Shown here in pieces: positions 4,061-54,440 of a stretch of 64,000 nucleotides of DNA. The DNA is taken from the NCBI GenBank assembly GCA_964188305.1, contig OZ076886.1; one strand, written 5' to 3'. The notes beneath the pieces are model-generated. The model saw only the letters and a program-made list of their open reading frames with translations, was not told the origin of the DNA and searched no databases. The position numbers and the translations under genes were made by a program. Source of the DNA: Podarcis bocagei (lineage: Eukaryota). The first letter of the stretch is position 1, and each line of letters begins with the position of its first letter.

Positions 4061-4082
4061 CTGCGTGTTTGTGTGGAAGAGG

Positions 4083-4190: not shown

Positions 4191-4221
4191 GATGTTCAAC
4201 CTACGGATTGCAATTGTAATT

Positions 4222-5839
4222 GAGCAAATTGTAATCTCTTCTGACACGGGGACATTCCCAGGGGAACCGAAGGAAGCAGTGGTGTGTCCACTCTTAAAGA
4301 AAACTTCATTAGATGCCTTAGATCTATCCAATTACCGCCCAGTTTCAAATCTTCCATACCTGGGTAAGGTAATTGAGAGAGCGGTTGCTGAACAGCTTGG
4401 TAGGTTTCTGGAGGAAACATCGGCATTAGATCCATTTCAGTACAGTTTCCGTCCTGGTTTTGGGACGGAGACGGCTCTGGTTGCCCTAACAGATGATCTC
4501 CGTAGACAACTGGATCGAGGCGAGTCAGGACTGCTGATCCTTTTAGATTTGTCAGCAGCCTTTGACATGGTTGATCATGATCTTCTGGACCACCGCCTCG
4601 CAGACGTGGGGATACAGGGCATAGCCCGTAACTGGTTGTGCTCTTTTATCTCTGGTCGGGGACAGAGGGTGGCACTAGGGAGGGAAATGTTGTCGCGCCA
4701 CTCCTTGGTGTGTGGAGTGCCGCAGGGCGCAATTCTCTCCCCAATGCTTTTTAACATCTTTATGCGCCCCCTTGCCCAGATTATCCGGAGCTTTGGGCTG
4801 GGCTGTCACCAATATGCTGATGACACTCAGCTCTATCTGCTGATGGATGGCCACACCGACTCGGCCCCGAACACACTGACCAGATGCTTGGAAGCTGTGG
4901 CTGGATGGTTTCGTGGGAGCCGATTGAAACTAAATCCTTCGAAGACAGAGGTCCTATGGCTAGGTCGGGACTCCCTTCTCTTGCGGGGGCCCAATTAGTG
5001 CCATTGCCTTCCATTAAGAGTTTGGGTGTAATCCTTGACGCCTCCCTTTCCATGGAGGCACAAGTTACAGCAACAGCCAAGGCGACATTTTTCCACCTTC
5101 ACCGCATCAAGCAGTTGGTCCCTTACCTTTCCCGCCCTGACCTGGCCACAGTGATCCATGCGACGGTCATCTCCAGGCTTGACTACTGTAATTCGCTCTA
5201 TGCGGGGCTGCCCTTGAAGCTGTCCCAGAAACTCCAGCGGGTACAGAATGCTGCAGCGAGGCTCCTCACGGGGTCTCTGCCATGGGAGCATATTCACCCA
5301 GTGCTTTTCAAGCTGCACTGGCTCCCGGTGGAGTACAGGGTCAGATTTAAGGTGCTGCTTTTGATCTTTAAAGCCCTTCACGGCCTAGGACCCGCGTACC
5401 TACGGGACCCCACAGAGAGCCTCAAGGTCCATAAATAGCAACACCCTAGGAAGTTAGATTGGCTTCAACTAGAGCCAGGGCCTTTTCAACTCTGGCTCCG
5501 GCCTGGTGGAACGCTCTGCCTCATGAGATCAGGGCCCTGCAGGATCTGATTTCTTTCCGCAGGGCCTGTAAGACAGAGTTGTTCCACCTGGCCTTTGGCT
5601 TGGAGCCAATTTGATTCCCTCCCTCCCTCTCTTTCTTTTTTCTTTTCCTTCTCCTCCTGCGATGAGGCTACATTTTAATATTTTAATGTTCCATTATTTT
5701 CATGTTGTATTTTATTTTTGTTTTTAAGTTGTAATCATTCATTCATCTTGTTTTTATTATTGCTTGTAAGCCGCTCTGAGCCCGGCCTTGGCTGGGGAGG
5801 GCAGGGTATAAATAAAAAATTATTATTATTATTATTATT
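4222..5839 (+). mobile_element. 5'-truncated L2-clade LINE with reverse-transcriptase domain
   Basis: ORF 4069-4998 has NYRPVSNL, LDLSAAFD, GVPQGAILSP and YADD motifs; frameshifted continuation 4884-5438 (SRLDYCN, LHWLP); 3' UTR and (TTA)n tail. Confidence 0.95.
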
Positions 5840-9900: not shown

Positions 9901-11021
9901 TGCACTAATGCTGTATATTGCATTAGATCATGTAAACACAAGTAATTAAGATTCCTAGTCAGGTTAAAAAAAGATAACAGGCAATATCCAATGGAAGTCA
10001 AACTCAAGAGTAGGCTGACTGAAATGAAGGACTAAAATCCACTGATTTTAATGAGTCTACTTTGAGTAAGATTAATGTTTGATATCACCCAATGAATGCT
10101 TAATGGGAACACATAAAGAAGCTGAATTTCACTGCTTCGTCTTAGCTCTTGCATTCACATCCTAAAATCAAACCTCCCTAACTACAAGAAAGCAAAGAGA
10201 ATACTACCCCATTTAAGGAAGACATAAAATGATGACTTATATCCAGCCTAATTCTATTGTAGAATCAATCTTGGCGCTGGCTGTATTTTGATAAGACTAT
10301 CCTGACTGCTAAAATGCATGAATTGAGGGATATAAGCTAATAAAATAGGATATTCCTATGATAAGCTTGTATTCAGAGCTTTCCTTCCATGAACAGAAAG
10401 ATCCATTTGGAGGAAAAGAGACCCGTCAGAGACTCCTGCTGGGAAAAGGGAGAGGGTAACAATTTTTCTGATCTCCATTTCCTCCTGTGCCACCCCCGCA
10501 AGTTCTGGAGAATCCCCAGCCCTCTGGTATAGGAGGAACACAAAAATCCTCTCCCCCACCTTTCCTCCAGCAGGAGCGTCTGATGAGTTGAGTTTTGCTC
10601 ATGGAATCCTTGGATTCACCCATAAAGACTAACATAATTCTATTCAAGTAGGAGACCTCAGCTGCACTGTGCTCTCAAATCATAGAGCCAAAGGGAAAGG
10701 TTACAGTTTCAGGGTGATTCTTTTTAATTGGGGTGGTGGACAGAAAGGACACATTTCAGTTTTACAGAAAAGTGTATCATTGGACCGTTGACCAATATTT
10801 GCATTTGACCGTCCATATCTGAGATCACTCTGTACTGTACTCAAAATCTACCAATTCAGCTTCAAAGCCAGGACTTCAAAGCTCTTCGCTATCAAAGCTG
10901 CACTGAACCAAGTATTGGATATAGGGTTAACACTGTTTATATATCCAGAGACATGTATGAAATCAAGAGTGACGCAGTCCAGCTGAAGTATTACACCAGG
11001 TTCCACAGCTATCATGGCACT

Positions 11022-11204
11022 TCAGGAACCAAAAAACACAAGCAGTTCATGGCAGAAGATGAAAGTAAAGAAATAGACACAAAGGTCTGTAAAAACATCC
11101 CCCATTTTGCTGTAAGTGTCCATGGAACGACTAATCACTTCTGCAGGGATCCCAGACAGTAAAAGAGCAGCAGTCAATACCGTGGTCTTCGTTTTCTTTT
11201 CACT
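11022..11204 (-). CDS. CAMLG: CAMLG exon 4 (terminal)
   Basis: acag|[60 protein letters not shown]; see frameshift finding. Confidence 0.93.
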
Positions 11205-11289
11205 CTGTATAAGAAATAAAAATTACTTCGTTTTTCACAGCTTTCATCTTTAAGCACCTTATCAGAGCTTTAATACATTTATTTTTTAT

Positions 11290-11420
11290 TTTTATTAGGT
11301 ATTTTGTGGTTTTATAACTTGATTTTATTCTGTGAACTGCCCTGAGGCACCCGGGTATAGGGAGGTATATACATTCAAATAATAATAATAATAATAATAA
11401 TAACAATAATAATAATAATA
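11290..11420 (+). mobile_element. LINE 3' tail with (AAT)n microsatellite
   Basis: TGTGAACTGCCCTGAG...GGTATATA followed by AAT repeats ~11378-11420. Confidence 0.6.
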
Positions 11421-12269
11421 CATTTCATAATATTACCTAATATTTTACGATACACTTCTCAAAGTGCATTTAAAAATGCATCTCAAAGGTATTTTCCTGT
11501 AATCTTGGTTGCTTGTTTCTATTATGATGAGCTCTTTCTGTTCACAAATAGCAGCTGGAGCTATTCTCTTACATTCATCAGGCAAGGGCAGAGGCTTCAG
11601 TGATGAAGTAATAACTTTGGGACTTGGAAACAGTGTTATCACACTGGAAATTGTTCCTTTCTTCAAAGTTCCATTACATTCGCTTGCCAGTTGTCTATAC
11701 TAAAAGGGACTTTTGTCCACTGATTGTTACTTAATAAGTCCCTTGTCATCCACATTTGGTAATTCTCATGTTTCACTCAATACTGTCACAAAAACAATGA
11801 TGACAGCAAAGGAAAGTTAGCTGAAAACGTCACCAGTTTGAAAGAAAAGTAAGATATTTGATCAATACACTAAAAGGTGAGAAGACATGAGGCTGTGCAT
11901 CAATCCCTGGGCAAAAATGTAAAGCAAAGGGGACAGAAACCTCATGCCAGGGCTACAAATTCAAGGCCTTTAAAATTTACTCAGAAGTAAGGTATTCTAT
12001 ATTTGAATGTAACTTACACCCATGAAGATCCTCAGTACTGAAGAGTTTATGCATTGTCTCTGTAGCTGACTACTCTCAAGTATTCAAAATGTATATACAC
12101 AAAATGCAAACAATTGCTGATAAACCTAAATTAGCATTGTACTGTATTGTCATTATCTGCTATACTGCATAAAAGCTAAGAAAATTCTAACACGGAGCTT
12201 TCTCCATCATATCTTTTTTTAAGTTAACACATTTTGATAATCCGTTTATCCTTAAAAAAAAGGTCTTAC

Positions 12270-12335: not shown

Positions 12336-13612
12336 CTGTGGGGGGGGAAAAACAAAGAAGTTAAATGAAACAGAAAGTAGTAACAAGAAATTCACATTGC
12401 TACATTATTTCAAGGAAATAGTCTATGAAGTGTTTCAGCCAATTGATTGGAAAATATAGAGAAGAGAACCAAATTTGAAAGCACCACTGTCAAAACAGAC
12501 TGAATTTATATTTAAGGAAGATCCAGAGAAGTCACTAACATATATCTAACGTACTGGTACAGACCTATAGGGTTAGAGTGCTATAGTAATGTCTAGGAAC
12601 ATGTCCATTCAAAAAGTCCCCAAGGAAAACTTTCATATGAATCATTCAGTAAATAATCATCCTTGCACATAATTAAACACTAACATTCAAATTTACTTTT
12701 GAATAATTTAAAGCCACTTGATAGTAGAAATGATTAGGCATTGCACTTTATATAGTTAGGAAATGCTTTTCTGCTGATTACCCAGTTCCCATAAAAATGA
12801 GCCTGGGAATCTCCAAATGGTTTGGATAGTTTTGTATGATTTTTGACAGATGATTAAGTAATTTAAGATAGCAGTCTTCTTCATTTTTGATGTCTAGAAA
12901 TTTGTGTCCATATCTTGCCAACTTGACCTCAGTCCTAAAATCAGACGGTTACATCTTCCTTAGGGGTTCTGATGGCAAGAAAACTTTAGTCCAATTGCTT
13001 TGGAGAGGCTGATTCATGTGATTAGCTCACAACAGGATTAAGACAAGGTGAAATCTAGGCATATTTTGTAGTTAAGCTTCATGCATAAGGCCACGTTTGT
13101 TCCACTATTAAATGTTATCACTGGCTAGTAAATTGTCAGCTGTGTTTTAGCACACAGTAGTCAGCAGTACTTGGCACAGCCTGAAAAGCAAACAACACTG
13201 CTGGCAATCCTGGGCTTCCAGGACTACCCATAGCTTAATTATTGCCAATACAGAAGAGCGCCAAAGTACAGTAATTTCTTGATGCTTTTGCTAGGCCAGG
13301 GCTTACAATTTCTTGTGGTTCTGATCCTCTTGCCAAACACCATGTGTCTTAAAATAATCATTGCTCAATCATCACTACTTAGGGCAAGCCACTGTTGAAG
13401 AGTGGACAGAATTATGGATTTGGGCTTAAATCCAAATCTCTACTTAACTATGAACTTGATGGGTGGGCCTAGGGAAAGTTATTACTTTTCTCAGCATAAA
13501 TTCCTTATCTGTCAAATGCAAATTCCACTGTCAAACTTTCTGGGCTAATCAGTAAGGCAACCAGGTCAAATAAACAAGAAGAACTAAGTTACTAAGACTT
13601 TTCTTTACTCAC

Positions 13613-14064
13613 CAAGTATTTGCAGACAAAAGCTCTAACTCCAATGGCAAGTAGCGCACACCCCACTAATCTAAAAATGCGGAAGGAATCAAATTCCTCC
13701 ACCACATTTCCATTTTCCTGGCTTGGCTTCTCACTGATAAGTTGGTTTCTTAGCTTCATCGCTTCATCAAACCTCGAGAGATACTGGTCTAACCCGTGGC
13801 GAGGTGCTCTCTGCGGAACCTCCATCAGATCCCCTCTGCTGCGCTGTCGGAGCTCGCCAGTGCCATCATTTCCAACCTCGGGAGTTATGCTAAACAAGTC
13901 CTTTTTCTCTCCCTTGTGCTCTATTGCACTGCTTGCGTGGTCGGCTGTTCCTGCCAAACTGCAAACAGTGTCACCTAGCACAACCCGTTTGGAAACAGGA
14001 GTGGGAAGAGTGCTTGGTTTATCTTGTTCCAGCTGAAGTTTTGATTCTGAATGGCTGTCATCAT
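13613..14064 (-). CDS. CAMLG: CAMLG exon 2
   Basis: ctttag|...VSKRVVLGD...[16 protein letters not shown]...[21 protein letters not shown]|gtgagt, 452 nt. Confidence 0.97.
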
Positions 14065-17000
14065 CTAAAGAGGAGGTAAAGAAGAAAAGAGTCACTATGC
14101 TAAATATTGTAGGTTACTCTACAAGACCTAGGCTAGTAGTCTTCCATGTTTTCAAACCTGGGACCCACTTTAAACCAAAACATGCATCTGTGGAACATTT
14201 TCTTCTTATTTTTTTTTAACCATATATTTGTACAGCAGTAGGGCTGCTGTTGTGACCATCTGAGATCAGGTCATAAACTGGTAGTGGATCCCTAGAGACT
14301 AAGGTCCTAGGCCATGCAGCTGTGGAACTAAGCACTGTAAGGGAAACAGGGGTCAAACAAGAATGGCATATACTTTTCACATTGAGCCTAATAACACTCC
14401 CCCTTCCTGCCCCAGCTAAATACCTGCTGCTTCTTTCATGTCTTTGCGCATTAAGGAAGTGGCCTGTGCAGTGATACACTGACAGATAGCCAAGGCTTTA
14501 GTTATTTATACTGATTGTTTTATGAGTTTGAAGTACTGGTTGCTTTATGTGTTTTATTGCAGTAACCTGTCCTGGAGAGTCATAGGGCAAAGGGGAAGGG
14601 CATAATTTTATTAAATAAATAAAAATGAAGCATAATACCATTTCAAAAAGATACTAAGAGTTGGTGCCCTTTCCCTTGCAGACCTCAGCCTACAAAACAG
14701 CTCCCTTCAAAAGGACACAGGACAAGTTACTTGCTGGCTTTTGAAAGCAACACAAGGACTAGGTGTTCAGTGGTAATTTTAAAAAGGATTGCACTGCTTG
14801 CGTTTTATTGCTGGTTTAATTTTCATACTATGTGGACAGCAGCAGAATTTTTTTAAAAGTCAGATAGAAGCCAACTTTCACAATCAGAGCTCATGTCTCC
14901 ACCTAATTTGGGGGATCCCCTCTCCCACCTTCATCCCCCTGCACTACAGCCCACTCCAACCAAAAGTATTCCCTAATCCTCAAGAGCAGGTTTTCATGAA
15001 GCTAGAGTGGTTACTTCTACCAACTCCATTCCATGTGCTTTCCTCTGGTTCCATTCCAGTTACAGTAGTTTATCGAGGCCAAATAACCAAATAATAAATT
15101 TTCCACACATATTTTTTTCCTGAGTCAAATAGATTGATTGCAGAGAGACTTTTTGCCAAAGCTCTTTAAATAACTCATTTTGCATATAACAGTGGTTTGG
15201 AGAGAAACAAGTCATACCAAGATGGATTTGTGACTACAAACTGTAGAAGGAAGAACAAAAGTACAAACCAGAAATGCAATCTTTAATCTTTTAAAAGTGT
15301 AAACATTTCATGCCTATTTTTTCCAAGAACTGTGACAGAATAATTAAAAACACCATTCTATAGGCTTTCCAAAACTGCTTTATAGCACATATATGAAAAG
15401 TCACAAAGCCTGCCAAGGAGAAAGCTGACCATAATGGGTTAGTTTGGACAGAACACTAACCCACAGTTTAGCGTTGCGAAAGCAAGTCTATATTTCTCCC
15501 AGGCTCACATGCTTTCACCCAACCTCTCCCAGAGCTTTCAATTTTTTATTAGTCACAGCTTCTCATGTCATCCAAGCTCAGTCAAACTGTGTTAGGATAG
15601 TTAACCATAGTTAAGATTAGCCATAGTTCAGGGTTTGGACAGCAAACTAAAGTGGTTAATCTAAAATGAAGCATCTGTTCCCCTTAGTGTTGACCAGGAA
15701 GAAGAGAAGGAAGGAGGGCATGTTTGTGGGGAGGAAGCAGTGCTAAACCCTCATTTAGCACAGGGGTGGCTGCCCCCCAGGCCAGCTTTGGTTTCCCCTA
15801 AAAAAAGCTCAACTAAAAAAAAAGTGGGTGTTCCTGCAACTCTTTTTCCAGAAAAAAATTACTGGTAATGGTGCTACAATGATAGAAAGCTGTAAACCTG
15901 ATGGGGATGAAAATCACCCTCTCCCTGGACTTCAGACCAATACTTTGATGACCAAGAGTTGAGGGCAAAGTATACACATGCAAGTGTGCATGAGTGAGGG
16001 TATGGGGTGGTCACATCCAGTGCTGACCTGCAGCCTCTAGAGGTTTGGCCAATACTGAATGTGACCCATGGGACAAAAAAGCTTTAGCAACACCTGGTTC
16101 AGGGACTCTTAAGTGCTTCAAGTTGTCATCTTTCTTCAGAGGATTACTAGCACCCTTAAACTAGAAAGAAACGATTTCAATCTCCAATATTTCAAACACA
16201 CTAGAAGGAAGAGAATGACACCAATACATACTGTGGAGTCTCAGCTCTGAAAATATTAAAGAGTACTGTAAGGACACAGAAAGAATCAAAGCACGTAAAC
16301 ACCTGCAAGCTCTAATGATTTCCACAACTCTCTTCCTCCTCTTCTTGACCAAAAAGTACTAAAAGCAGGAGCTACTGTACAGCTTCCCCACCTAAGTGTT
16401 AAGCTACATTCTCTGCTTTTAAATGCAGCCAGAAGCACAGCACATTAATAAAACTATCTACATATTCAATAGGAAATCAAGGAACATGACAAAGATTCAT
16501 TATGCAAGCAGTAGGCAAATCACCATGGTCTCAGTTCCACATTTAAAAATGGCAACACAAGGCAAACAAGTGTTACAAGTTATATTGTGAACTGGAAACA
16601 TTATCTAAATGATAAATAACAGGAAAGAGACCAGTCTGCGTGTTATACCGGTTAGGGTTAAAGGAGTAGAAAGATTCAGATTCCTGTACTCTCAAAGTTC
16701 TCTCACATAAAGCTCTTGCGCAGTCAGACGCAAGCTTATTGCAAGGATACACCCACCCAGGGCTTCTTGGTGGTAATAGCTGTTTTAAACCCATATGTCA
16801 TCCCAAAAAACTAATACATTGAGTGAATAAATAAGCAACAGGTGGGATAAAAACGATTCAGAGAATAGAATTATGAAAAAAATACTGATTTCATTCAGTA
16901 ATAAGTATTGAAATGATTCAGCATGGTTTGTTGGCACTTTCGCGTCAAATATAAGAGCGTTCAGCATTCTCCATTGCAAATGGAAGCACAAATCCTGAAC

Positions 17001-26743: not shown

Positions 26744-26898
26744 CTAAAGAAATATGCATATAATTGATAAGATATGAAGAGGCTACAGGTCAGATCGTGA
26801 TTAACAATAGGAATAAAGACCTTTATTGTGTAAAAAGGCACAATGTACCGACCCGTATGTTCCAACTGCATTTTACCCTTCAGTATGATTAACCTTAA

Positions 26899-27250
26899 GG
26901 GACGTGGGTGGCACTGTGGGTGAAACCACAGAACCTAGGGCTTGCCGATCAGAAGGTTGGCGGTTCGAATCCCCGCGAGGGGGTGAGCTCCCATCGCTTG
27001 GTCCCTGCTCCTGCCAACCTAGCAGTTCAAAAGCACATCAAAGTGCAAGTAGATAAATAGGTACCGCTCCGGCGGGAAGGTAAACGGCGTTTCCATGTGC
27101 TGCTCTGGTTCGCCAGAAGCAGCTTAGTCATGCTGGCCACATGACCTGGAAGCTGTACGCCGGCTCCCTCGGCCAATAAACTGAGATGAGCGCCTCAACC
27201 CCAGTCGTCCGTGACTGGACCTAACGGTCAGGGGTCCCTTTACCTTTACC
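26899..27250 (+). mobile_element. Sauria SINE, full length
   Basis: tRNA-like head with GGTTCGAATCC B-box; (ACCTTT)n tail; perfect 15-bp TSD TATGATTAACCTTAA (26884-26898, 27251-27265). Confidence 0.93.
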
Positions 27251-36982: not shown

Positions 36983-37265
36983 CTGCAAGAGGGGGAAAAA
37001 TATAGTGCTTTACTACAAGATACAAGCATTCTAGGGATTGAATATTCTAGATATAGTCGTACACCTAGCATTCCCTAAGGTTATCACATAAAATTTATCC
37101 CCCTAACATGTTACATCCTCAAGCACTAAACCCTTGAAAGAGCTAGCAATTGATACAATGATGTCCCACTGGAAGCAGGTAGCATATTAACATACAGCAG
37201 GTATCTGATATCAATACAGTTGATGCTTTTAGTGGATTTATGCTCATTTGACAAAGAAAACTCAC

Positions 37266-37392
37266 CATCATTCACTCTGTAACATAAATTGCACTTCCAT
37301 CTCCTTTGGTCAAGAAAGCTGACAAAAGGATTGATGTATGTCCTACAGCTACGACATCTCACAATTGTACTGGAGGTTACCACAGGCAATTG
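37266..37392 (-). CDS. SEC24A: SEC24A exon 8 (zinc finger)
   Basis: QLPVVTSSTIVRCRSCRTYINPFVSFLDQRRWKCNLCYRVND. Confidence 0.98.
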
Positions 37393-38868
37393 CTGGAAAA
37401 GAGAAATGCTTTTGTAAGTCATGTGTTGGGAATACACTAGCCACCTTGAGTAATTTGGGTGCCTACCTCTGGCCCAGATGTAAACAGATATGGTACAATG
37501 GTCTAAGCACTAGCGTCTCTGTCAGCTGAAGGTGGGTTTCCACATGTGTGATAACAACAATTATTTTAACTGCGGCTCAGTGTTTTATTTGACACCGAGA
37601 CATACATGAATCATGCTCTGGGATGGGAAATGGTTTTGCAAGACCACCATATTATGTTAAATCACCAGTTTTACAAGCAAAAAATTATCTTAAGTGACAA
37701 TGCACAAAGTTTATTGCTGCAGTAAAATGGAAGCAGAAGGACTACTACGGTTGTATCTAATGGTACAACTTAGCTTGTCCCACAGAACTTCCTTTCCCTC
37801 TCCTTCCTTACCCCCCATCAACTGCTGCAGAGGGTTTGAAAAACCCCAGAGCAAACTGGGGCAGTTGTAGGAGGAGGAGGAGGAGAGGGAAGGGAAATTC
37901 CATTGCAAGAGGATGTTGTTCCACTGGTGCAATGACTTTGTAGGATACAATCACAATCCCTCCTTTTATCAGGAAGTGCTGTTTAGTTTTGGCCACTAGT
38001 CCCCTTACCAGCATATTCTTAAACTGGAGTATTAAACTTAATCCTGTAAGGTCACATTCAAATGTACATTTACATAAAAAGGAAACCCATTATAAGAAAA
38101 CAGGGTAGAGTGGCTGTCTACAATGATAACAACCGATGCCACAAACATTTCCCACTAGGATCAAGTAGTTATTCCCCAGCCTAGAAACCCTCTACCTATT
38201 TGCAAACAGCAACCTATTCACAGCAGGTTAAAAATCAGGGAAAGGCGGATTTTGAATGCACTCTTTGATTTAAAGATTAGCAACTGAAATATCTGTTAAG
38301 AATAAACCTAACACCATACGGCTTTTGAAGGCTTCAGTGCTGAATGACACACAAAGTTACTACCACAAGGGTATAGATAAGATGTTGAAGAATTGGAAGG
38401 TCTCCATTAACAAAGCTCCTTTCAAGTGGGGCTCTGAAATGTCATCTTGCAGGAAATGTTATTTTTCTAGGGCAAGGCTAACAAAACTATTTATACTGGC
38501 TGTAGTCATATGATCTTCTAAAACAATGGTTTGGGGAATTTTGACCACACTCTTCCTTCCCTTGCACATAGGGCCTAATTCCTTACTTTCTGTATTGAAC
38601 CAAATCACAAGCTGCAGTGCCACCCAAACCACTGAACTGCCGCTTTGGGTGATATTGCGTAAAAGGATCTATCCTGGTTTGCAATCCTGATTTGTAGGTA
38701 CTGGCCACATCATTTGATTCAAGCCCTACAGAAGAAATGGGATGTGGGGGGAATGCATGTGCACAGCGCTCACACTCCATCCTCCAAATATTGTTTGGAG
38801 GATTATTTGAATGCCTTATTCTGAAAGCCAACTCCCCATCACTCAGAGTTTTACATAATGTATCATAC

Positions 38869-43766: not shown

Positions 43767-43912
43767 CAGTGCTTTTTATCTTAATAAATGTTCAGGGGTA
43801 CGCTCATTTTCCTACTCATATTGAAATACAGCCCCTCAATGAGGCCAAACATAGATTCACAAAATGTTTAGGGGTATGCGTATCCCTGCATCCCCCCAGA
43901 AAAAAAGCACTG
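43767..43912. mobile_element. hAT-type MITE
   Basis: TIR CAGTGCTTTTT/AAAAAGCACTG; near-identical 8-bp flanks ATTTCATC/ATTTCCAC. Confidence 0.8.
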
Positions 43913-44083
43913 ATTTCCACCCACAATACACATGAGAACATTTATTCGTTTTTCCAGAATTGATTGCTTTTAAGTACATCATTATTTCAAAAGTCTGGAC
44001 TCAAGAATGCTCAAGATGAATGACAGTCAATATTCTTTGCTACTCCAGTTGCAGAAATATATTGGGAGAATTTCTTTTCTTAC

Positions 44084-44602
44084 CTGGCTTTGTATAGCTG
44101 TTTTGAACTGGAGGACCTCCAGCAGAAGAAACATGATAGCTTGCTGATGGATTTGTACTCCCTGATGAAGGTAACAATGGCTGAGTTCCCCCTGCATGAG
44201 CAAAATGGTTTGGCTGAGAGCCCATTGCTGGCTGAATTGAAGGAGCCTGTCCGTACTGCCAGTTTGAGTGTGCTGGGAGATTAACTCCAGAAGGAAAGCT
44301 ACCTGCAGAGCTTGATGCAGCAGCTGAGTTCTGCGATAGAGGAGGCATCTGGGCAACAGGTCCCTGTTGTGCTGTTGCTAGAGAAGCAGATCCAATAGGT
44401 GGCCGATTAAGAGTTTGCCCAGGTCCCTGATAATTACTAAAAGGTGAAGCGTTCTGAGGTGCACCATAGTTATAGGGTCCAGAAGATGTATGCACCAGGT
44501 TCTTTGCAGGCGCTTGCTGAGAATACATGCCTGGGACAAAAGAATTGTATCCCTGTCCACCTGGTAAGTGTGATGAATTCACCATTGGGTTTTGTACAGG
44601 AC
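44084..44602 (-). CDS. SEC24A: SEC24A exon 2
   Basis: ccccag|GPVQNPM...NYQGPGQTLNRPP...GGPPVQNSYTKP G|gtaag; 519 nt low-complexity N-terminal region. Confidence 0.95.
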
Positions 44603-45420
44603 CTGGGGAAGGAGGAAAATCACGGAATGAATGCTATATATTCTCGCCATTGAGGAATGTAAACATTTCAGTAACAGAAACTAAATTTTCCTGAAGATAC
44701 AAGTTAAAGGCAGAGAGAAAGCCACCGGGAAAAGCAGTAATTATATGCAATTTTTGCCGATTTGCTTCACATTAATTATAAAGTCCCCATATCATTGTTC
44801 ACAATGAGGTATAATTCCATATAAAGAACTAACATGTTTAAGATTTTGCACAGTCAAACAAAAAGGTATGCAATCACAACATACAAGGGCTGCACAAAAA
44901 GTGCTTGGTTGCACAAAAAGAAGGGAAGCTTACACCAAGTCAATTCGCAACCCACTGCTCCTCACTATATTTCCCTGTGACCTTAAAAATCTTCTCCAAA
45001 GGTTCAAAGAACCCTTAGTAAAGGCCTTTGGTGTGAGGTGGGGAGCTACCAGAGAAGACAGGAAATAGTCCCAAATCAAGCAGAGACCCTTTCCATTAGC
45101 ACTGTAGCATTATAGCAAGCTGGTTGGCACATGGTTACACAGGGGAATGGAATTAAGTCATGTTAACTCCCTGAATCATCAACCCAGGTGTCATGCAGGA
45201 GACATGTGAAGCAGGTCTGTAGCTGGGATAGGGGAGATTGCCCCCCAAATTCTCTGACCCCCTAACTTTTAATGAACTGATAATTAAAGTTATTTTAGAA
45301 AATGAACATGACAATCTTTCTTTTTCTTCTTAAATATGCTCTTATTTTGGGGGTGGTACTGGATCAGAATCTTCCTACCATTAAGCATCATGTGACAAGA
45401 GTAAGATGCTTTCCATTAAA

Positions 45421-45485
45421 ATGGAAAGGCGGAAGATTGACAGAACTGGTCAATTTTTTCTTAAGTATCTACATTCACCAATTAG
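45421..45485 (+). other. Candidate first coding exon of a nested antisense gene or pseudogene
   Basis: AAAATGG Kozak (alternative ATG 45406), MERRKIDRTGQFFLKYLHSPI, donor AG|gtgagt in phase 2. Confidence 0.3.
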
Positions 45486-45559
45486 GTGAGTTATTGACCA
45501 TTGCACTCATAAATCAAAAAACACATTCAAGGAGACATACAATACTGTTATATCTGTAG

Positions 45560-45780
45560 CTTGCAAACATTTGCTCAAGCGCTGAATGAGGACAATTTGA
45601 ATCCACTCATTGAAATACTGAAACACAACCCAGACTACTTGAAATCAGAGCCTGAGTTAGTAAAATCCCTTACTGATGAATGTCCATCGTTGGTGCAATC
45701 TGCATATGAGCTCACAAAATATGGAACAGCATTTCCAGGACATGGTCTTTTCATTAAGACTGCGCTGACTATTCTAAGCA
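45560..45780 (+). other. Candidate internal coding exon, unknown product
   Basis: tctgtag|...|gtatgt; 73 open codons with globular helical composition LQTFAQALNEDNLNPLIEILKHNPDYL... Confidence 0.4.
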
Positions 45781-45836
45781 GTATGTAAACAGCTGAAATC
45801 TGCTTTCCTAATTTAACACTAGTTTTAGGTTCACAA

Positions 45837-46197
45837 GGGACGCAGGTGGAGCTGTGGTCTAAAGCACTGAGCCTTGGGCTTGCCAATCGGAAGATTGGCG
45901 GTTCGAATCCCCACGACGGGGTGAGCTCCCGTTGCTCAGTCCCAGCTCCTGCCAACCTAGCAGTTCGAAAGCACATCAAAGTGCAAGTAGATAAATAGGT
46001 ACCACTCCGGTGGGAAGGTAAACAGCGTTTCCATGCACTGCTCTGGTTCGCCAGAAGCGGCTTAGTCATGCTGGCCACATGACCCGGAAAAACTGTCTGC
46101 AGACAAACATCGGCTCCCTTGGCCTGAAAGCGAGATGATTGCCACAACCCCATAGTTGCCTTTGACTGAACTTAAGATCTAGGGGTCCTTTACCTTT
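45837..46197 (+). mobile_element. Sauria SINE, full length
   Basis: Highly similar to 26899-27250; B-box GGTTCGAATCC; ACCTTT tail; partial TSD AGGTTCA. Confidence 0.93.
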
Positions 46198-49100
46198 TTT
46201 TTTTTTAAAAAAAGGTTCATAGCTATTGCCAGTACTGTAATAATGTAAAGCAGAGCTTGCTCTTTCAAGCAGTAACGTCATGACAAAAGCATTGGTCTTA
46301 GATTCACTACATTTTGCAGCATCGAAAACAAGAAAACGTTTGTTATAAACTGTAAGAATACTGTTGAAGCTCATTCTTGACTTTCTACTAGTAGTTTCTC
46401 TTGTTTTGTTACCTTTTTTGTTACTGGTAATTGATTGCAAGAAAAGTAGCAATTGTCGAAGTTGCTTAGTGAAATATTTTGAATGTACACAAGCTGCAGT
46501 ACAGTTAAAGGTTAAATAAAAACAGTTTACAATTTTGTCTTTAAAAGTCCTACAGACCAGATAAATGCCATATTGCTTTTTTGGTGCCCCTTCCCAAAAT
46601 GTTGAGGCTCCCTATGGGCATGATATGGAATGCATCACAACAGTTTTGATTGTTACTTTAATGCAGCCATAGAGAGCTCCCTGTTTGATCAGAACAGTGG
46701 GAAGGGGATGCTTAGCCCTAAAAAAAATTCCAACTCTCCCATCCAGGATTTTTTTCTCCCCAAAGAGGAAATATTAAGTTGACCTGATGTCTCCCCTACA
46801 AATGTGAAAGAAGGGGGCATGACCATCCCAAACTACTGCTTTGATCAAATTTAGAACCTGCTGCAACTGCATTAAACTGAAAACAGAACAGGAGCTGTCA
46901 GCAGATGTTCCCCATGTATCCTGTGTCACATCTGGTTTGGCTCCAAGCCGCCATGAGGCAGTAAGAGAGGGGACCACGGTATAGTTAATTTGCTTCAGCC
47001 ACAGGCCATACACAAACAAATGCAGGCATAAAACAAAAACACAAAACAGGCAGAAACAGATAAGATGAAAGAACAACTAACTCCAGGAGTCTTTCCTGTT
47101 ATTGAAGAGTCATCGCAAATACCACCACCCTGATCCAAGTAACAGATCAAGAGCATCAGGCTCAAAAAGAATTTTGCCAAGGAAGATGTGGGGACTGTGC
47201 AGTCTGCTTATATTCATTATAAAAGGACTTGTTTTGTAGATTTTACCAAATTTATCAGCTGGAGGACAAATATATTTCCAATACTTGCAGTTGAAGAATA
47301 ACTAAGCAAGTAACGAATAATGCCGTCAATTATGACAGACACAAAGGTGCAAACTGAAGGGGATTTCCAGTATTTCTAATGCAGAACTGCATGTGGTATT
47401 TTGTAGAATGTGAGAATGGTAAACACTTGGGTTGCTCAACATAACAGTTAATATCAGTTAAATAATTTTCAGCAACATTTTAGTACATAAACACAACATG
47501 GGGCCATTTTCATGTAGCCCATCCATCCCACTAAGAATTATTGCCTTTAAGTCCCAGCATTACAAAGGATGCTCAAAATTGAGAAAGCTCATGAACAAAA
47601 ATCCACATGATCAAAACATCACCGCAAAACTCTTGTATCATATGACTAACTGGTAGGCTGAGCTGAGTACATTCTGTACAACAGATTTTGGGGAGTCTGC
47701 TTTGGATCTATTAGCAATATAACTCAATACTTGAAAAGGTTCAAATGCACATACAATTCTACCCCAAGTATTACTTCACTTCAGAGAAAATACTCATGGA
47801 GAGCTGGGGTGCCTAGAATAGTTCTTAAAAACTTTTCTGAAAAAAATCAGTATCAGAAAACCCATCATTCTCTCAAATTGTAGCTTAAGACCAGAGGCAT
47901 AATTTGGACAATAATCTTTAATAAAGGGCAATCTGCCAAAACAGTTTCCTCAGAAATTTTGGGCATGGATTTTAATTTTTCATTTTTAGATAGCTTATCT
48001 TGAAACAGATGTTTATTTGTTCAGTTTCATGGCTGGTGCACAAATATAAGTTTAGTTTCGTCATCAGTAATGTTCAGCAAAATACAATCTGTTTCTGAAA
48101 AATCAACTCGTTTTTTTTAAAAACAAAATGCTAAGATCCATGAGAAATAAGTTCCACATCTTCTATTTTACCACTACTGCGTCCTGGGTCTCTGTGATGG
48201 TGAGAGTCGAAAAATGGGTGTGAGGGACCTAGTTTTAGATAGGTAACAGAGTAAATAACTACCAGTAATTACAACAAGTGATAATCTGACCAGTACAGAG
48301 TAATTTTGACAGAGCTTTCCCCCAAGGGTACAGACATTTTGACTAGTCATCATTCAGAAGGCTGGCAGTGTCTCTAAAATACATTTTGCTGAGGTTTCAT
48401 GGGCCTCTGAATCTTAATGTGACTGCAGGGCCAAGTCTGCCTCCTTTCATGGGAAGGACTGGAATCAAAGGTCCACAATGTCATTGCTACAAAGCATGTT
48501 CGTTATTCTGGCAGGAACTCTTCTCATCCTTCTCTGGAGAAGGAAAGAGGCTTGGGAAAATCTCTCATCTATGCTGGGCTTTGGATGCAGTAAGGAATCG
48601 TTTTGCTTCCAACTGTCACCGACGGCCAGAATAAGGTGACAAACATCATGCCCTCTCTCCACCCCCTCCCCAATGCTTACCTCAGTAAAAGCTCTGCTCA
48701 ACAGTAGTGGGCAGATTTTTGTGTATAATATGAACAAGTACAAATCAAATCTATATTGTGGAATAAAGATATTAAATAATACCTACCACACAGCATAATT
48801 TTTACGGGGAAAATCATTCCCCATGCATGCAAATGCCCTAGCCATTAAAATATTTAGCCAATAAAAAGTAGCCAATAAAATTTTTAAGGTGTGTGTTCTA
48901 TGTATAGTGTAACTGCCAAACATAAGTAGCCTAAGATACTCTTTCATATTTGATTTTCAGTTTCAAGATGACAACTCATCAATTCAGTCAATTCTCCAAC
49001 TGATCTGTACTTCCTGTTTTTCAGAAAGCAGCAAGATCCCACACTTTCAAACAGTCAAGTGAGCTCTCATTGATTTCTGATTCCTCAAGCCAGATCTCAT

Positions 49101-49512
49101 GAAGAAAAGTAATCAAATGACACAGAGTATGTAAAGTTGCCATAAGACAAAATTACCTGTGGAAGGACCAAACTTATGTGTGCTATGAACAGGGCTATAC
49201 CAGAATAGAAATGCATCTGTATACATTTCAAAGCTGGAGTTCAAAGCTGAATTCTGCTCTTCCATTCTTTAGAGCTTGCCACTCTTCTATTATATACAAG
49301 TCTTGTAAGCATTCTTTGTTAAGAAGATCTGAATCAAGCCAGATGCTTTCTGGAGACTATCCAGATATCCTTGTAATACTTAGGGTAAGCGATCAGGCAG
49401 TTTTTTAAAATGATTTTGTTTAATATTTGTATGTCATTTCCTCAGCAACTAACTTGAGCTCAAAGTGGCTCACAGGAGAAATAAAAATACTTCCCAATAC
49501 AAAACAAATATA

Positions 49513-49753
49513 CAGTCAATACTTGGTTCCCGAATGCCTCCTCTTTGGAACACATTGGCTCCCAAATGCAAAAAACTTGGAAGTAAATGCTCCGGTATTC
49601 GAATTTTTTTTGGAAATTGAACATCTGACGCGGCTTCCGCTTGAATGCAAAAAGCTCTTGCAACCAATCGGAAGCTGGGCCTCGGTTGTGAAACATTTCG
49701 GAAGCTGAAGGGTCTTCCAGAATGGATTATGTTCGTCAACCGAGGTTTGACTG
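49513..49753. mobile_element. Tc1/mariner-type MITE
   Basis: TA|CAGTCAATACTTGGTT...AACCGAGGTTTGACTG|TA. Confidence 0.8.
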
Positions 49754-50880
49754 TACCGCAAAAGTATAATAAATAAAATAAATGAATCGAAACAATACTA
49801 GACAGCAAAATTACAAAATTCAAATCAAGATAAACAGGATTGGTATCAGTATAAGGCAGTTATGGGGAACTGGGCATCCATCATGATGGATCCCCAATCC
49901 ACACACAAACCCCCGGCAGGGTAACTTTGACAGGTGAGAGACACCACCTACCTGTCATAACATAAGGCTACAGATGGGAAGCACACCTTCAAAGGGGTTT
50001 GCTATAACCGAACCTCCAAACTGCATTTCCCCCTCTGCATGCATCTGCAGAAGGATCAATGCACCATTTGGAAGAAGTGGTTTGAATTCAGCTTGCTCCA
50101 AACAGATAAAGTTAGTCCCCCTCAACTACACTATTTTGGTCAAAGAACTCCCTAGTACAGCCAGTCGGAATGGGACTCCCTGCCAGTAGCTATCAGTTGG
50201 CACTGGCAGGGAGCACCACTTCCAAAAGAATGATCAGGACCTCAGCCCTCATTTGTTCCTTTGTAGCCAAATCCATACCTGCCGCACACCTGATACCACT
50301 AATTGCATGAGATGTGAGGCAAGTGGGTGTGTTTTGTGGATAAAGGCCTCAAAAACCAAATTGGGACTCATGCCAGGCTTAATTAGGCCCACAGGCTGGA
50401 GGTTTCCCACTGCTAGAGTATGTTGTCCCAGGAGTCATGAGAATAAATGAGAACAGCCAAAGTAAGAACATCAAGAGATGCAAAGTATCAAGGGTAAGTC
50501 CAATGAGAATTCTGGGAATGAAATGAATCACTAGAGTATAAAGGATGTGGAGGAATAAATACGTGTGTCATGTAAGGCTGGAACAGGCACGTTTTGCTGG
50601 AATCTCAGGTCTGCTCAGAAGCTCACAAACTGGAAGACCTGGAAAGTTCTACATCTACATTCATCCTTACACACAGTCTTTAGATTTTTGGGTCCTATTC
50701 AGACTATTAAACATGGCCTTCCAAACAGCAAACCACAACATCAGCTCACACAATGACTAGGGCTATTCTGCTGGCCTTGCACAGTGGTGGTATGGGTGTT
50801 AAAGGGATGTGGGCCAGCGGTATGCCTGACATGTGTAAAGGATGGATATTTATTTACTCTGCCAAAAAGTTCCTTTAAGA

Positions 50881-51109
50881 TGTTGTTGTTGTTTAGTCAT
50901 GTCCAACTCTTCGTGACCCCATGGACCAGAGCACACCAGGCACTCCTGTCTTCCACTGCCTCCCGCAGTTTGGTCAAACTCATGTTAGTAGCTTCGAGAA
51001 CACTGTCCAACCATCTCGTCCTCTGTTGTCCCCTTCTCCTTGTGCCCTCAATCTTTCCCAACATCAGGGTCTTTTCCAGAGAGTCTTCTCATCTTATGAG
51101 GTGACCAAA
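50881..51109 (-). mobile_element. BovB/RTE LINE 3' end
   Basis: (TTG)n tail then TTTAGTCATGTCCAACTCTT.GTGACCCCATGGAC...CCAACCATCTC.TCCTCTG...ATCAGGGTCTTTTCCA, a BovB-like terminus. Confidence 0.88.
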
Positions 51110-52030
51110 CCAATTCCTAATTCCACAAGAAAAGAACACTCCCATTATTGGGAAGCATCACACTAGCCTGATATTTTGCTCCTTTCCCTCACATATTCCA
51201 GTGGCCCAGGGCCTCTCTAGGCATAACTAGAAACCTTGGTTTTCTGCTAAACAAATCTCCTCCAATTATGCATATAAATAAATAAATGAAGGGCAGGAGG
51301 AGCTTGTTAATATTTCCCATTATGTCTGATCCAGGCCACTGGTTTCCGTTTCAGCTTGTTCTAAACTTACTTCTTCTTTACTCCATCTATACTTACATAT
51401 AATTAAATTCATTTGTTCAGAACTGTGCATTTTTAACAGCAGCACTTTTTTGGCAACCTACTCTCTGCTTGTAGATTGTTCTATTTAGAGTACAAGTTGT
51501 TCAGAAGAAGGGCTGACTTTATGCTATATGAGCCATTCATGATGTTGGCAAAACACAAGCCATATTCATGTATCCAAATTATACTTAGAATCTCTTATGA
51601 GACAAATAATTAAATGATGATTTTATAAAACAACAATCTTTTACAGCTAGCCATTTCAACTGCAGATATTCAAGTATAAATGTGCAGCTATTTAAGCGTA
51701 GGAGCTGTACTTCGGGGGGGGGGCAATCAAGATCCTCCCACCACCACATAAACATAGTGCCACATAGGCAAACCAAGTTCAAAATGGTGACTGATGCCTC
51801 AATGATATTTCAGCTAAGTGAAGATATTCCAAAATGCCACACTGAATCTGTAACCTTATTTCCTCATTTGATTCCAAAACAAGAAATGTTCCTTTTTAAG
51901 GTGCTACACAGATTTCAGATACTGTTTAGAAATATGATCAAGAGTGAGCAACTTGATTTTATGTGAACTTAATGTGCAGCATTCTGCTGCTACATAGAGG
52001 CAGCATTGGGACATATAGGCAGCATTGTCC

Positions 52031-52521
52031 CAGGGGTCTGCAACCTTTAAGATAAAAAGAGCCACTTGGACCCGTTTCCGAAGAAAAAAAAACTGGGAGC
52101 CACAAAACTCGTCATTATAAAAATAACTTTTTTGTCACTTTTTATTATTTCTTTGTTTGACCCCTCAGAATTACTCCTCCTCATAGAAATAAACGTTAAA
52201 TTAACAAGTTACCTTTTTTTGTGTGTGTGTTCTTCACTCCCCTTCAAAACAGTGAGCAGCGTACATGCCCCCTTTCAATGCAGTGACCAGCGTACATGCC
52301 CCTTACAATGTAACGGGCAGGCGGGAACGTGACGTCGGGACGGTGTGTGACTAACGCACGCACCACCCCATGCGACATCACAGCCAGTACAGCGCCTGCC
52401 ACAGTGGGGAGTGTCGGGGCGCACAATGCGCCTCCTCCCCTCACTAGTATCCGCCCCGGAGCCACGGCAAAGGTGTAAAAGAGCCACATGCGGCTCCGGA
52501 GCCGCGGGTTGCAGACCCCTG
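52031..52521. mobile_element. Non-autonomous hAT element
   Basis: Perfect 15-bp TIR CAGGGGTCTGCAACC/GGTTGCAGACCCCTG; subterminal GAGCC repeats; CpG-rich interior. Confidence 0.88.
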
Positions 52522-52876
52522 TCCCAGAGCATTATATGCCATGGTTTACAAAACTCTAGACACGACACGTCTCAGCAATAATTCCTTGGTTTGATGTTTG
52601 CTAGCAAACCAGGATGACTGACATTAAGTTAGAGTTTCCCAGTTGGTATTTAATGGGAACTCTGGCTTAATAGAAGACAGAATGTTTTTGCTATAGCTAG
52701 CATGCAACAGGAAGAGGAGGGATAGGGAAGAACATACTTCCATGGTGCTTGTCTATGGTTTCATAAGCCATGGCTTATGAAACTGTAGATATTCCAAATG
52801 TTGCCACCAGCCACAGAATTTTATTCCAAATAATGAAGTTCTGTGGTCATTCCCATAAATCCTGAAACTGGGGTGC

Positions 52877-52995
52877 ATAAGAATAGCCTGCTGGATCAGG
52901 CCAATGACCCATCTAGTCTAGCATCCTGTTCTCACAGTGATTGCCTGTGAGAAACCAGCAAACAGGATTTAGGCACGAGAGCACTCTCCCCTCCC
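52877..52995 (-). mobile_element. CR1-tail-type retroposon 3' end
   Basis: Reverse strand ends ...GATCCAGCAGGCTATTCTTATG. Confidence 0.65.
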
Positions 52996-53899
52996 ATGTT
53001 TTCCAGCAAGTACAATTTAAATATATATAGCAAATGCATATTATCAGCCCCATCCAACCGCATAAATGCAGTGTGGACCAGATCTAAAGGTTACAAATTG
53101 TGTTGCTTAACCCAGAAACATCTGCAGGTGTACCTGTGGGTGAAGGGGCATAGTTCAGACATGTATCAACCCAGTCTCAGATTATAGTTATGTTCCACGG
53201 TAAAAGAAGACTTGAGCAATCAGTCAGATAAAAGAGATTCGATGTTATACTTTGTATCCAAATACTCACACAAGCAGTTCTTGGTCATGATCCACCTAGA
53301 TTCTTTGTAGCAGATGAAGAACACAAACTAAAGCTACTACCACACTGCATGCAGCCCTCCTCACGTCAAGCCCTTCATTCTTACAAAAAACTGTGGGGCG
53401 GTTATTCCGAAGACGCAACTTATCATCGATCAAGTGATTGTGAAATCGAGAAACTACCTTTAAAAAGTTACATGAGCAGCTGGCTTGTACAGAGCAGTCA
53501 CTCGACACTTTCTCCTTTTGTTCTGCATTAAGGTACGTGAATATTCCGGCAAGGAACGTTTCGCTCTTAAGGGTGCCACCAGGGCTCCGAACCCACGCCA
53601 TTCACAAGCCTCCCAAGCAGGAAAACACTAAGGTCTGCCATGAAGCCAAAACCGGATATCAAATCAAGCCTGAACAATAATAATAAGAGTGCTACTGCTC
53701 AAAGCACTTCCCCATTAGTCACTCGCTAATAGAGAAGCCGCGACTGCGACTTAAGGAGCCGGTCAGGAAACGGAGCCTTAAAGGTCTGGGTCAGGGTTAG
53801 GAAGTAGAAACCCTCCCAGGCAGGCTCCGAAAGCCGTGTGAGTCGTCTAGCAGCAAGAAAACCCAGCGCTCCTCATTAGACACATCTAAACACGCACAC

Positions 53900-54440
53900 C
53901 CCTCCCTGCCTTTGCTGGTGGCGCTCACTCGCCTCGCGCCCCGTCCCAAGGGCCCTTCCAGGCACAAGACGGGCGTCAGCGCCGGCATGTTGGGGTCCTC
54001 CGCGCAGTCCGGGCGCTGCCCCCACCCGACCCCACCCGGACGCGGCCGGGCCTCCCTCACCGTTGCTGTACGGCTGCTGCTGCTGCGGCTGCCCAGCCCC
54101 GTTCTGGCTGCTGTAGGCGGCGGGTCTCCCTGGCTGGGCCATGGTGGTGGCGGCGGCGGCAGCGGCGGCGGCAGGAGGGTCGTCGGTGCGCGGGCTCCCG
54201 TGACTGCGCGCCCGGCCCCAGCGCCAAGCCCAGAGTGGGAGGGCGGGGAGGCGCTCACCCTCCTCACACCGGAAGGGACCGGACGCAGCCGCGCAAGCGC
54301 ACTCCGTACACGTGGCACTTCCGGGGACAGAGTGAGCGAGAGGGGTCGTGGGCGGGGCTTATGGCTGAAGAGCAGCGGCCCGGGAGAGATGGAGGCGGGG
54401 GTGCTTAAAGGGACAGGACGGCGAGCGCGCTGCCCCGGAC
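53900..54440. promoter_or_regulatory. SEC24A CpG-island promoter
   Basis: GC boxes at 54241 and 54350; ETS CACTTCCGG 54316-24; CACGTGGCA 54309-17. Confidence 0.85.
54061..54142 (-). CDS. SEC24A: SEC24A exon 1 coding part (COPII cargo adaptor)
   Basis: GCCGCCACCACCATGG Kozak; MAQPGRPAAYSSQNGAGQPQQQQPYSN G|gtgag; phase fits exon 2. Confidence 0.93.

What the first reader, a model, noticed from the sequence alone, without database searches (positions are those of the whole stretch)
45406..46510. Spliced antisense gene or pseudogene candidate nested in SEC24A intron 1
Seen: three plus-strand segments join in phase. 45421-45485 has a strong Kozak ATG and AG|gtgagt. After a 74-nt intron, 45560-45780 reads SLQTFAQALNEDNLNPLIEILKHNPDYLKSEPELVKSLTDECPSLVQSAYELTKYGTAFPGHGLFIKTALTILS. 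The next intron holds the Sauria SINE, then acceptor ttttgcag| at 46320 gives TSKTRKRLL*, about 105 aa in total. The middle exon has E/K/L-rich amphipathic character unlike the spurious ORFs around it. I do not recognise the protein. Inference: an unannotated nested gene.
Basis: partly seen in the sequence, partly recalled or inferred. Interest (0 to 1): 0.7.

Follow-up and report, generated by a model that had tools for sequence, protein, structure and literature searches.

The report
Decayed hAT transposase fragment, not a gene
The protein-like stretch in the first intron of a lizard SEC24A gene is a broken leftover of a cut-and-paste (hAT-type) transposon gene, split by a later SINE insertion; it is not a spliced nested gene, so the finding is ordinary.

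Summary
The spliced-gene reading fails.

- **One true relative.** The middle segment has a single relative among 1.84 billion protein representatives: an "uncharacterized protein" of the lizard Hemicordylus capensis.
- **That relative sits on a dead transposase.** Its gene model lies on three broken, colinear reading frames carrying DUF4371 (hAT transposase core) matches. It lies beside a FERM gene, not in SEC24A.
- **The similarity ignores the proposed splice sites.**
  - It changes frame at a 1-base gap at 45584/45585.
  - It runs through the stop at 45786-45788 and past the proposed donor.
  - A SINE with a 7-bp target duplication cuts it.
- **No coding pattern.** Differences between the two copies are spread evenly over codon positions (32/25/32).
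- **No transcript support.** Two stranded RNA-seq runs with 15-30x depth on the neighbouring SEC24A exon have no read on any proposed exon. RNA contigs of two other runs cross three of the four proposed splice sites unspliced, and no junction is seen.

Verdict: an old, 5'-truncated relic of a hAT-type transposase, of low interest.

The parts
45421..45485 (+). It is not part of any demonstrable homology and is not transcribed in the runs examined.
   Evidence: Local DNA alignment of 44604-45489 against L001 10001-11706 scores 16, against shuffles of 13.9 +/- 1.8. Depth is zero in X16, X17 and X5, and 0.35 in X1, which comes from a contig starting at 45500. Pfam gives no hit.
45490..45579 (+). 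Relic segment A in frame 1, homologous to residues 164-193 of P0003 (195-224 of L001 ORF3).
   Evidence: tblastn gives 16/30 identical residues, joint E 3e-18. blastn aligns 45490-45816 with L001 11707-12049 at 69% over 346 columns. See also alignment A1.
45584..45585 (+). One-base length difference from the Hemicordylus copy. It shifts the ancestral frame from 1 to 3.
   Evidence: Alignment A1, column 186. The tblastn segments change frame here.
45585..45827 (+). Relic segment B in frame 3, homologous to P0003 196-281. It also carries an 18-nt gap at 45635/45636 and a 3-nt length difference at about 45785-45787 that overlaps the stop and the gtatgt.
   Evidence: phmmer E 7.9e-06 against 1.84 billion representatives. 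BLASTP 35/70 identical. tblastn 42/87 identical. Alignment A1.
45834..46212 (+). SINE insertion that splits the relic. It is flanked by the target-site duplication AGGTTCA at 45827-45833 and 46213-46219.
   Evidence: A second copy at 26897-27247 is 82% identical over 366 nt, and the flanks are printed in the same output. Word depth is 10^5 in RNA contigs. ARAGORN calls no tRNA in it.
46306..46347 (+). Relic segment C, after the SINE, homologous to P0003 296-309.
   Evidence: blastn 46306-46337 against L001 12103-12134, 91%. Local alignment score 28 against shuffles of 12.9 +/- 1.6. tblastn 9/14 identical.
46370..46393 (+). Possible last piece of the relic, matching the C-terminal residues 340-347 of L001 ORF3, in yet another frame. 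The match is weak.
   Evidence: tblastn 5/8 identical, E 18 on its own. Only its colinear position supports it.
44082..44603 (-). SEC24A first coding exon. It serves as the host-gene landmark and as the positive control for expression.
   Evidence: Spliced mRNA contigs in X1 and X5 cover exactly 44082-44603. Depth is 15-30 in the stranded runs X16 and X17, with all first mates on +. The upstream exon joins at 54062. The zinc-finger exon 37129-37509 gives Sec24A as the best PDB hit, 5.5e-24.

Best explanation
The feature is a dead, 5'-truncated fragment of the C-terminal part (about 155 residues) of a transposase gene of a divergent hAT-type DNA transposon. The likely architecture is zinc finger, DUF4371 RNase-H-like core and a hAT C-terminal region.

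The likely history is as follows. The element, or a piece of it, landed in intron 1 of SEC24A on the opposite strand. It then decayed by small indels: a 1-base frameshift at 45584/45585, an 18-base gap, and a 3-base length difference that overlaps an in-frame stop. Later a SINE inserted at 45827-45833 and split it.

The surrounding splice-like motifs are coincidences: the gtatgt 'donor' overlaps the 3-base difference that also gives the stop. The locus makes no spliced product.

Shown here: the colinear homology, the breaks, the SINE with its target duplication, the absence of junctions and of plus-strand reads, and the non-syntenic position of the only relative. Inferred: that the family is hAT, the order of events, and complete lack of function.
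For: - **One relative.** A full HMMER scan of 1.84 billion representatives gives one single-stretch relative, P0003, at E 7.9e-06. BLASTP shows 50% identity over 70 residues. P0003 is XP_053150271, 'uncharacterized protein LOC128344344' of Hemicordylus capensis.
- **Its locus is not syntenic.** L001 lies beside a FERM-domain gene and has no SEC24A exon.
- **Its locus looks like a broken transposase.** L001 holds three colinear broken ORFs. ORF1 matches DUF4371 positions 3-152 (E 4.7e-05) and a zinc finger (E 0.006). ORF2 matches DUF4371 positions 185-233 (E 8.8e-04).
- **The C-terminal ORF points to hAT.** ORF3, which holds the part shared with the window, scores 0.95 to Dimer_Tnp_hAT clusters by Atlas features, and all ten best named hits agree.
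- **The literature fits.** DUF4371 proteins are hAT transposases with an N-terminal TTF zinc finger and a C-terminal hAT dimerisation region (PMC3985635; PMC3942097).
- **The window homology ignores the splice model**.
- **No coding pattern.** Differences over 110 aligned codons fall 32/25/32 by codon position.
- **RNA.** X16 and X17 are stranded, about 1.9 Gb each was read, and depth on the SEC24A exon is 15-30. Neither has a read on 45374-45775 or 46312-46445.
- **Unspliced contigs.** Contigs 45500-45751 (X1), 45576-45817 (X5) and 46208-46407 (X1) bridge the sites 45559/60, 45780/81 and 46319/20 unspliced. No joint 45485>45560 or 45780>46320 is seen.
Against: - Both DUF4371 matches are below Pfam's gathering score.
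- Pfam's Dimer_Tnp_hAT model hits neither P0003, nor L001 ORF3, nor the window peptide.
- No terminal inverted repeats or 8-bp target duplication were found around the window fragment.
- Only two copies of the family were seen, one per species, so its copy number is unknown.
- The tissues of the RNA runs are not known to me, and testis may not have been sampled.
- Seven small RNA-like runs from two studies hold part of 45500-45817 at 4-10% of the SEC24A exon depth, so the stretch is present in RNA, unspliced and of unknown strand.
- The perfect AGGTGAGT at 45484 sits exactly at the 5' edge of detectable homology. I treat that as coincidence.
Confidence: 0.88

Rival explanations
1. A real, lineage-specific, spliced nested gene. 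Three exons (45421-45485, 45560-45780, 46320-46348) would encode a protein of about 105 residues, expressed in a tissue not sampled here, for example testis.
For: All splice-like motifs and the ATG are present, and the segments join in phase. The perfect AGGTRAGT donor is the only one on the + strand. The two differences from organism A inside exon 2 (45689 and 45764, both G>A) are synonymous third-position changes. They are also both CpG transitions.
Against: - There are no plus-strand reads and no junctions in four runs, and contigs cross three splice sites unspliced.
- Homology to the only relative runs through 'intron 1', through the stop and past the second donor.
- Exon 3 is out of the ancestral frame.
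- The first eight residues of exon 2 are an out-of-frame reading of the ancestral sequence.
- No protein of 40-128 residues is related.
- Differences are flat across codon positions.
- The ORF length is at chance level.
Confidence: 0.03
2. A fragment of a duplicated or retro-copied host gene, that is, a conventional pseudogene of a cellular gene like LOC128344344, rather than a transposon relic.
For: NCBI annotates P0003 as a protein-coding gene with four identical isoform records. Only one relative exists in the protein libraries, unlike the usual abundance of annotated transposase proteins. No terminal inverted repeats were found.
Against: The P0003 model splices round a broken reading frame. 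The skipped part carries the zinc finger and both halves of DUF4371, in order. The shared C-terminal part has hAT-dimerisation features. The two copies lie in unrelated genomic neighbourhoods in two lizard families.
Confidence: 0.07
3. A transposon relic that has been exapted as an unspliced non-coding RNA or as a regulatory element of SEC24A.
For: RNA-like runs from two studies repeatedly hold 45500-45817 and 46208-46407 as colinear contigs, while most other intron bins are empty.
Against: - The runs were chosen because they hold this stretch, which is a selection effect.
- Depth is 2-6 against 55-72 on the exon.
- The contig at 46208-46407 abuts a T12 run, which is A12 in the SEC24A pre-mRNA. 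That suggests internal oligo-dT priming on intronic pre-mRNA.
- The two deep stranded runs show nothing outside the SINE.
Confidence: 0.02

Closest known systems
hAT-superfamily DNA transposons whose transposase has a TTF-type zinc finger, a DUF4371 (PF14291) RNase-H-like core and a C-terminal hAT dimerisation region. This is the ZMYM1-like / Tip-BuT2-type architecture (PMC3985635, PMC3942097).
   Same: The Hemicordylus copy has, in order, a zinc-finger match, DUF4371 positions 3-152 and 185-233, and a C-terminal ORF whose language-model features match Dimer_Tnp_hAT clusters. The window fragment corresponds to the last ~155 residues of that ORF.
   Different: It is very divergent. All Pfam matches are below the gathering score and PF05699 is not hit at all. 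No terminal repeats or 8-bp duplication were found. The window copy lacks the whole catalytic part.
LOC128344344 of Hemicordylus capensis (XP_053150271, 318 aa, 'uncharacterized protein').
   Same: It is the only detectable relative: 48-53% amino-acid and 69% nucleotide identity over window 45490-45827, and 81-91% over 46306-46347.
   Different: It lies at a different genomic place, beside a FERM gene and not in SEC24A. It keeps a 349-codon open frame where the window copy has a frameshift, a stop and a SINE. It is itself a model that splices over broken transposase frames.
Sauria-type tRNA-derived SINE of squamates (PMC13295347, listed and not read).
   Same: It is an element of about 380 nt in very high copy number. 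It has a second copy in the window, a T/A-rich tail and a short target duplication.
   Different: The family name was not tested against a repeat library, and ARAGORN finds no tRNA in its head.

Membership tests
   No such joint in four runs. Contigs 45500-45751, 45576-45817 and 46208-46407 cross three of the four sites unspliced.
   X16 and X17 are stranded and have 15-30x depth on the SEC24A exon. Neither has a read on any proposed exon. The tissues are unknown, so this does not prove absence everywhere.
   Relative to L001 there is a frameshift at 45584/5, a stop at 45786-8 and a SINE at 45834-46212. Differences by codon position are 32/25/32.
hAT transposase (DUF4371 type) | RNase-H-like catalytic core (DUF4371 / DDE) | tested here: inconclusive
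   Absent from the window: there is no similarity upstream of 45490. In the related locus L001 there are two colinear sub-threshold matches, E 4.7e-05 and 8.8e-04, at 23.8 and 19.6 bits against a cut-off of 32.1.
hAT transposase (DUF4371 type) | C-terminal hAT dimerisation domain (PF05699) | tested here: inconclusive
   The Pfam model does not hit the window peptide, P0003 or L001 ORF3. Atlas features put ORF3 with Dimer_Tnp_hAT clusters at 0.95, with 174 shared features and 10 of 10 best hits agreeing. The AlphaFold model is too poor to use, pLDDT 43.9.
hAT transposase (DUF4371 type) | Terminal inverted repeats and an 8-bp target-site duplication | tested here: not met
   Only short, chance-level inverted repeats occur in 44600-47600. 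This is expected for an old truncated fragment, but the feature is not shown.
hAT transposase (DUF4371 type) | Dispersed copies at non-orthologous sites | tested here: met
   Two copies in two lizard genomes lie in unrelated neighbourhoods, SEC24A intron 1 and beside a FERM gene. Copy number within a genome was not testable.
SINE | Multi-copy short element with a target-site duplication | tested here: met
   A second copy is 82% identical. Word depth is 10^5. AGGTTCA flanks both ends.
SINE | tRNA-derived head, and assignment to the Sauria SINE family | not testable with these tools
   ARAGORN finds no tRNA. No repeat library is on hand.

The most novel reading that the evidence does not exclude
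The relic belongs to a so far undescribed, very divergent squamate lineage of DUF4371-type hAT transposons. Its only trace in 1.84 billion protein representatives is one mis-modelled lizard 'gene'. Less likely, the surviving open frame is used as a small testis-type nested gene.
Probability: 0.2. Interest if true: 0.2.

Novelty: already known. Interest (0 to 1): 0.08.

Why it matters
It matters little. It is a routine example of how a decaying transposase frame, with chance splice-like motifs around it, can imitate a small nested gene.

Two practical points follow:
- The locus should not be annotated as a gene.
- The Hemicordylus model LOC128344344 looks like a gene model laid over a dead transposon, and would deserve a flag in annotation.

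Tried and rejected
- **Family and structure scans of the window peptides.** Pfam on exon 1 and exon 2 gave nothing. PDB sequence search gave only chance hits. Atlas features of exon 2 were weak and ankyrin-like, below the recognition level, and I did not pursue them.
- **Word-index protein searches.** Exon 2 gave nothing. P0003 and L001 ORF3 returned only P0003 itself.
- **P0001, P0002 and P0004** of the big search match through many short repeated stretches. I rejected them as low-complexity matches.
- **Structure.** AlphaFold2 on L001 ORF3 without an alignment gave pLDDT 43.9. That is unusable, so I ran no fold search.
- **PDB search** with P0003 and with L001 ORF1 found no transposase structure.
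- **Terminal inverted repeats:** none found.
- **Earlier notes of the scan:** nothing by place or by sequence.
- The exons were searched apart, by reference.
- I re-ran it from tool output.
Full report
**1. The observation**

- An ATG at 45421 lies in the context aaaATGg.
- Twenty-one codons plus two bases run to 45485, followed by gtgagt.
- tgtag|c at 45559/45560 opens a segment that translates exactly as quoted.
- a|gtatgt follows at 45780/45781.
- A repeat lies between the second and third segments.
- ttttgcag|c at 46319/46320 gives TSKTRKRLL and a stop.

The genomic setting is also as stated.
- Minus-strand ORFs in 28-40 kb carry SEC24 sequence. The zinc-finger exon gives Sec24A as the best solved-structure match, 5.5e-24.
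- Spliced mRNA contigs delimit the first coding exon as 44082-44603.
- The loose end of one such contig matches the window at 54062-54086.
- Intron 1 is therefore 44604-54061, and the candidate lies in it on the opposite strand.

**2. Is it more than chance?**

By length it is not. The open frame is 45513-45788, 91 codons stop to stop. The window has 76 open frames of at least 92 codons and 150 of at least 75. For 53 of those 150 a comparable model can be assembled, with an ATG exon, a donor matching 6 of 8 positions and an acceptor with a pyrimidine tract. The perfect AGGTRAGT at 45484 is the only one on the + strand. About one per strand is expected in 64 kb, and the four on the minus strand lie in the SEC24A gene body.

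**3. What the middle segment is**

Family scans, solved-structure sequences and the word-index protein search gave nothing. Because the claim rested on absence of relatives, I used the exhaustive HMMER search of 1.84 billion representatives.

It returned one single-stretch relative, P0003, at E 7.9e-06. BLASTP shows 35/70 identical residues. The three other hits match through 6-20 short repeated stretches and are compositional.

P0003 is XP_053150271, 'uncharacterized protein LOC128344344' of the cordylid lizard Hemicordylus capensis. It is alone in its cluster.

**4. What P0003 is**

Its locus L001 (CM050091.1:74696229-74718402) lies beside a FERM-domain gene. It has no SEC24A exon, so it is not the orthologous place.

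On its + strand there are three colinear ORFs separated by frame breaks: 10001-10822, 10865-11098 and 11125-12174. The annotated protein uses the start of the first, skips the rest and continues in the third.
- ORF1 matches DUF4371 positions 3-152 of 237 (E 4.7e-05) and a C17orf113-type zinc finger (E 0.006).
- ORF2 matches DUF4371 positions 185-233 (E 8.8e-04).
- Each match is below Pfam's gathering score, but the two are colinear and complementary.
- ORF3 holds the part shared with the window. Its nearest named Atlas clusters are Dimer_Tnp_hAT (0.95, 174 shared features) together with FAM200/GTF2IRD2-like and ZMYM1-like clusters. All ten best hits agree.

According to PMC3985635, DUF4371 proteins are transposases of hAT transposons, with an N-terminal TTF zinc finger, an RNase-H-like domain and usually a C-terminal hAT dimerisation region. 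The Drosophila hAT element BuT2 has DUF4371 plus the hAT C-terminal domain (PMC3942097).

I therefore read LOC128344344 as a gene model laid over a decayed hAT-type transposase. Two caveats apply. PF05699 itself does not hit. The single-sequence AlphaFold model was unusable at pLDDT 43.9.

**5. How the window aligns to it**

This is the decisive part. In order along the window:
- **No similarity upstream of 45490.**
- **45490-45579, frame 1.** It aligns with P0003 164-193 (16/30 identical).
- **45584/45585.** The window is one base shorter, and the homology moves to frame 3.
- **45585-45827.** It aligns with P0003 196-281 (42/87 identical), with an 18-base gap at 45635/45636.
- **About 45785-45787.** The alignment carries on beyond both.
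- **45827-45833.** The homology is cut by a SINE (45834-46212) flanked by the duplication AGGTTCA.
- **46306-46347.** It resumes against L001 12103-12144: 34 of 42 bases, score 28 against shuffles of 12.9 +/- 1.6, and 9/14 residues.
- **46370-46393.** It probably ends here, at the C-terminus of the ORF.

At the nucleotide level, 45490-45816 is 69% identical to L001 over 346 columns. Over 110 aligned codons the differences fall 32/25/32 by codon position, and dN/dS is about 0.5. That gives no sign of coding constraint since the copies separated.

The three segments 'join in phase' only because short chance exons were fitted around the one surviving open piece of a single old reading frame.

**6. 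RNA**

The run search listed no holder on record as RNA. It did list small RNA-like runs holding 0.10-0.55 of the words. I laid four runs on 43900-47900.
- **X1 and X5 are RNA.** Their contigs splice SEC24A exons.
- **X16 and X17 are stranded RNA-seq.** About 1.9 Gb was read from each. They cover the SEC24A exon at depth 15-30 with all first mates on +. They have no read in 45374-45775 or 46312-46445. Their only other signal is multi-copy SINE reads.
- **X1 and X5 give low-depth contigs colinear with the genome.** Depth is 2-6, against 55-72 on the exon. The contigs are 45500-45751, 45576-45817 and 46208-46407.
- **These contigs bridge three proposed sites unspliced.** They cross 45559/60, 45780/81 and 46319/20 with more than 31 letters on each side.
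- **No joint of the proposed kind is listed.**

The contigs stop at the SINE edges, as expected at a repeat. The one at 46208 abuts a T12 run, which is A12 in the SEC24A pre-mRNA. Internal priming on intronic pre-mRNA is therefore a sufficient explanation, but this is an inference.

The runs were selected for holding this stretch, so their coverage of it is not independent evidence of expression. The tissues are unknown to me.

**7. Differences from the relative 'organism A'**

Inside exon 2 there are two differences, 45689 and 45764, both G>A, both third-position and synonymous, and both at CpG. Exon 3 has one non-synonymous change, 46338 G>T. These are too few to weigh.

**8. Verdict**

- The spliced nested gene is not supported.
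- The 'pseudogene' alternative is right in the sense of a transposon-gene relic.
- Earlier notes of this scan say that this genome, of wall-lizard type, is rich in hAT elements. I took that as context only and did not test it.

Noticed in passing
window 46820-47040: RNA contigs of organism A from two studies (X1, X5) replace these 221 bases by 17-20 other letters. The ends are TG..AC, so it is not a splice. It is probably a structural difference (insertion or deletion) between the window's genome and organism A (tables 5 and 5c).
   Followed up: partly
window 52875-52939 and L001 12613-12678: A 66-base stretch is 88% identical between the window and the Hemicordylus locus. In Hemicordylus it lies about 440 bases downstream of the broken transposase ORF. 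It may be an unrelated short repeat or a piece of the element's 3' part.
   Followed up: no
L001 10001-12174 (Hemicordylus capensis LOC128344344): The annotated 318-residue 'uncharacterized protein' splices from the start of one broken ORF into a third. It skips the zinc finger and DUF4371 parts, so it looks like a gene model on a dead hAT-type transposase.
   Followed up: partly
window 26897-27247: A second copy of the same SINE, 82% identical and in the same orientation, lies inside the SEC24A gene body.
   Followed up: no
window 4069-5438 (+): Overlapping ORFs of 309 and 184 residues have a reverse-transcriptase-like sequence, suggesting a LINE fragment. Window 5148-5392 also matches L001 22021-21781 at 67%.
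   Followed up: no
window 13592-14095 (-): A 167-residue ORF that I recognise from memory as a CAMLG exon. That would fit the SEC24A-CAMLG neighbourhood known from human. It was not tested with a tool.
   Followed up: no
window 45913-46101 (SINE body): There are many A>G and other differences in reads and contigs over the SINE. The word depth of 10^5 shows these come from other copies of the repeat, so they are not evidence of RNA editing (table 3).
   Followed up: no
window 46195-46213: The SINE tail is T12 followed by A7. The RNA contig 46208-46407 of X1 starts right beside it, which looks like internal oligo-dT priming on the minus-strand SEC24A pre-mRNA.
   Followed up: no
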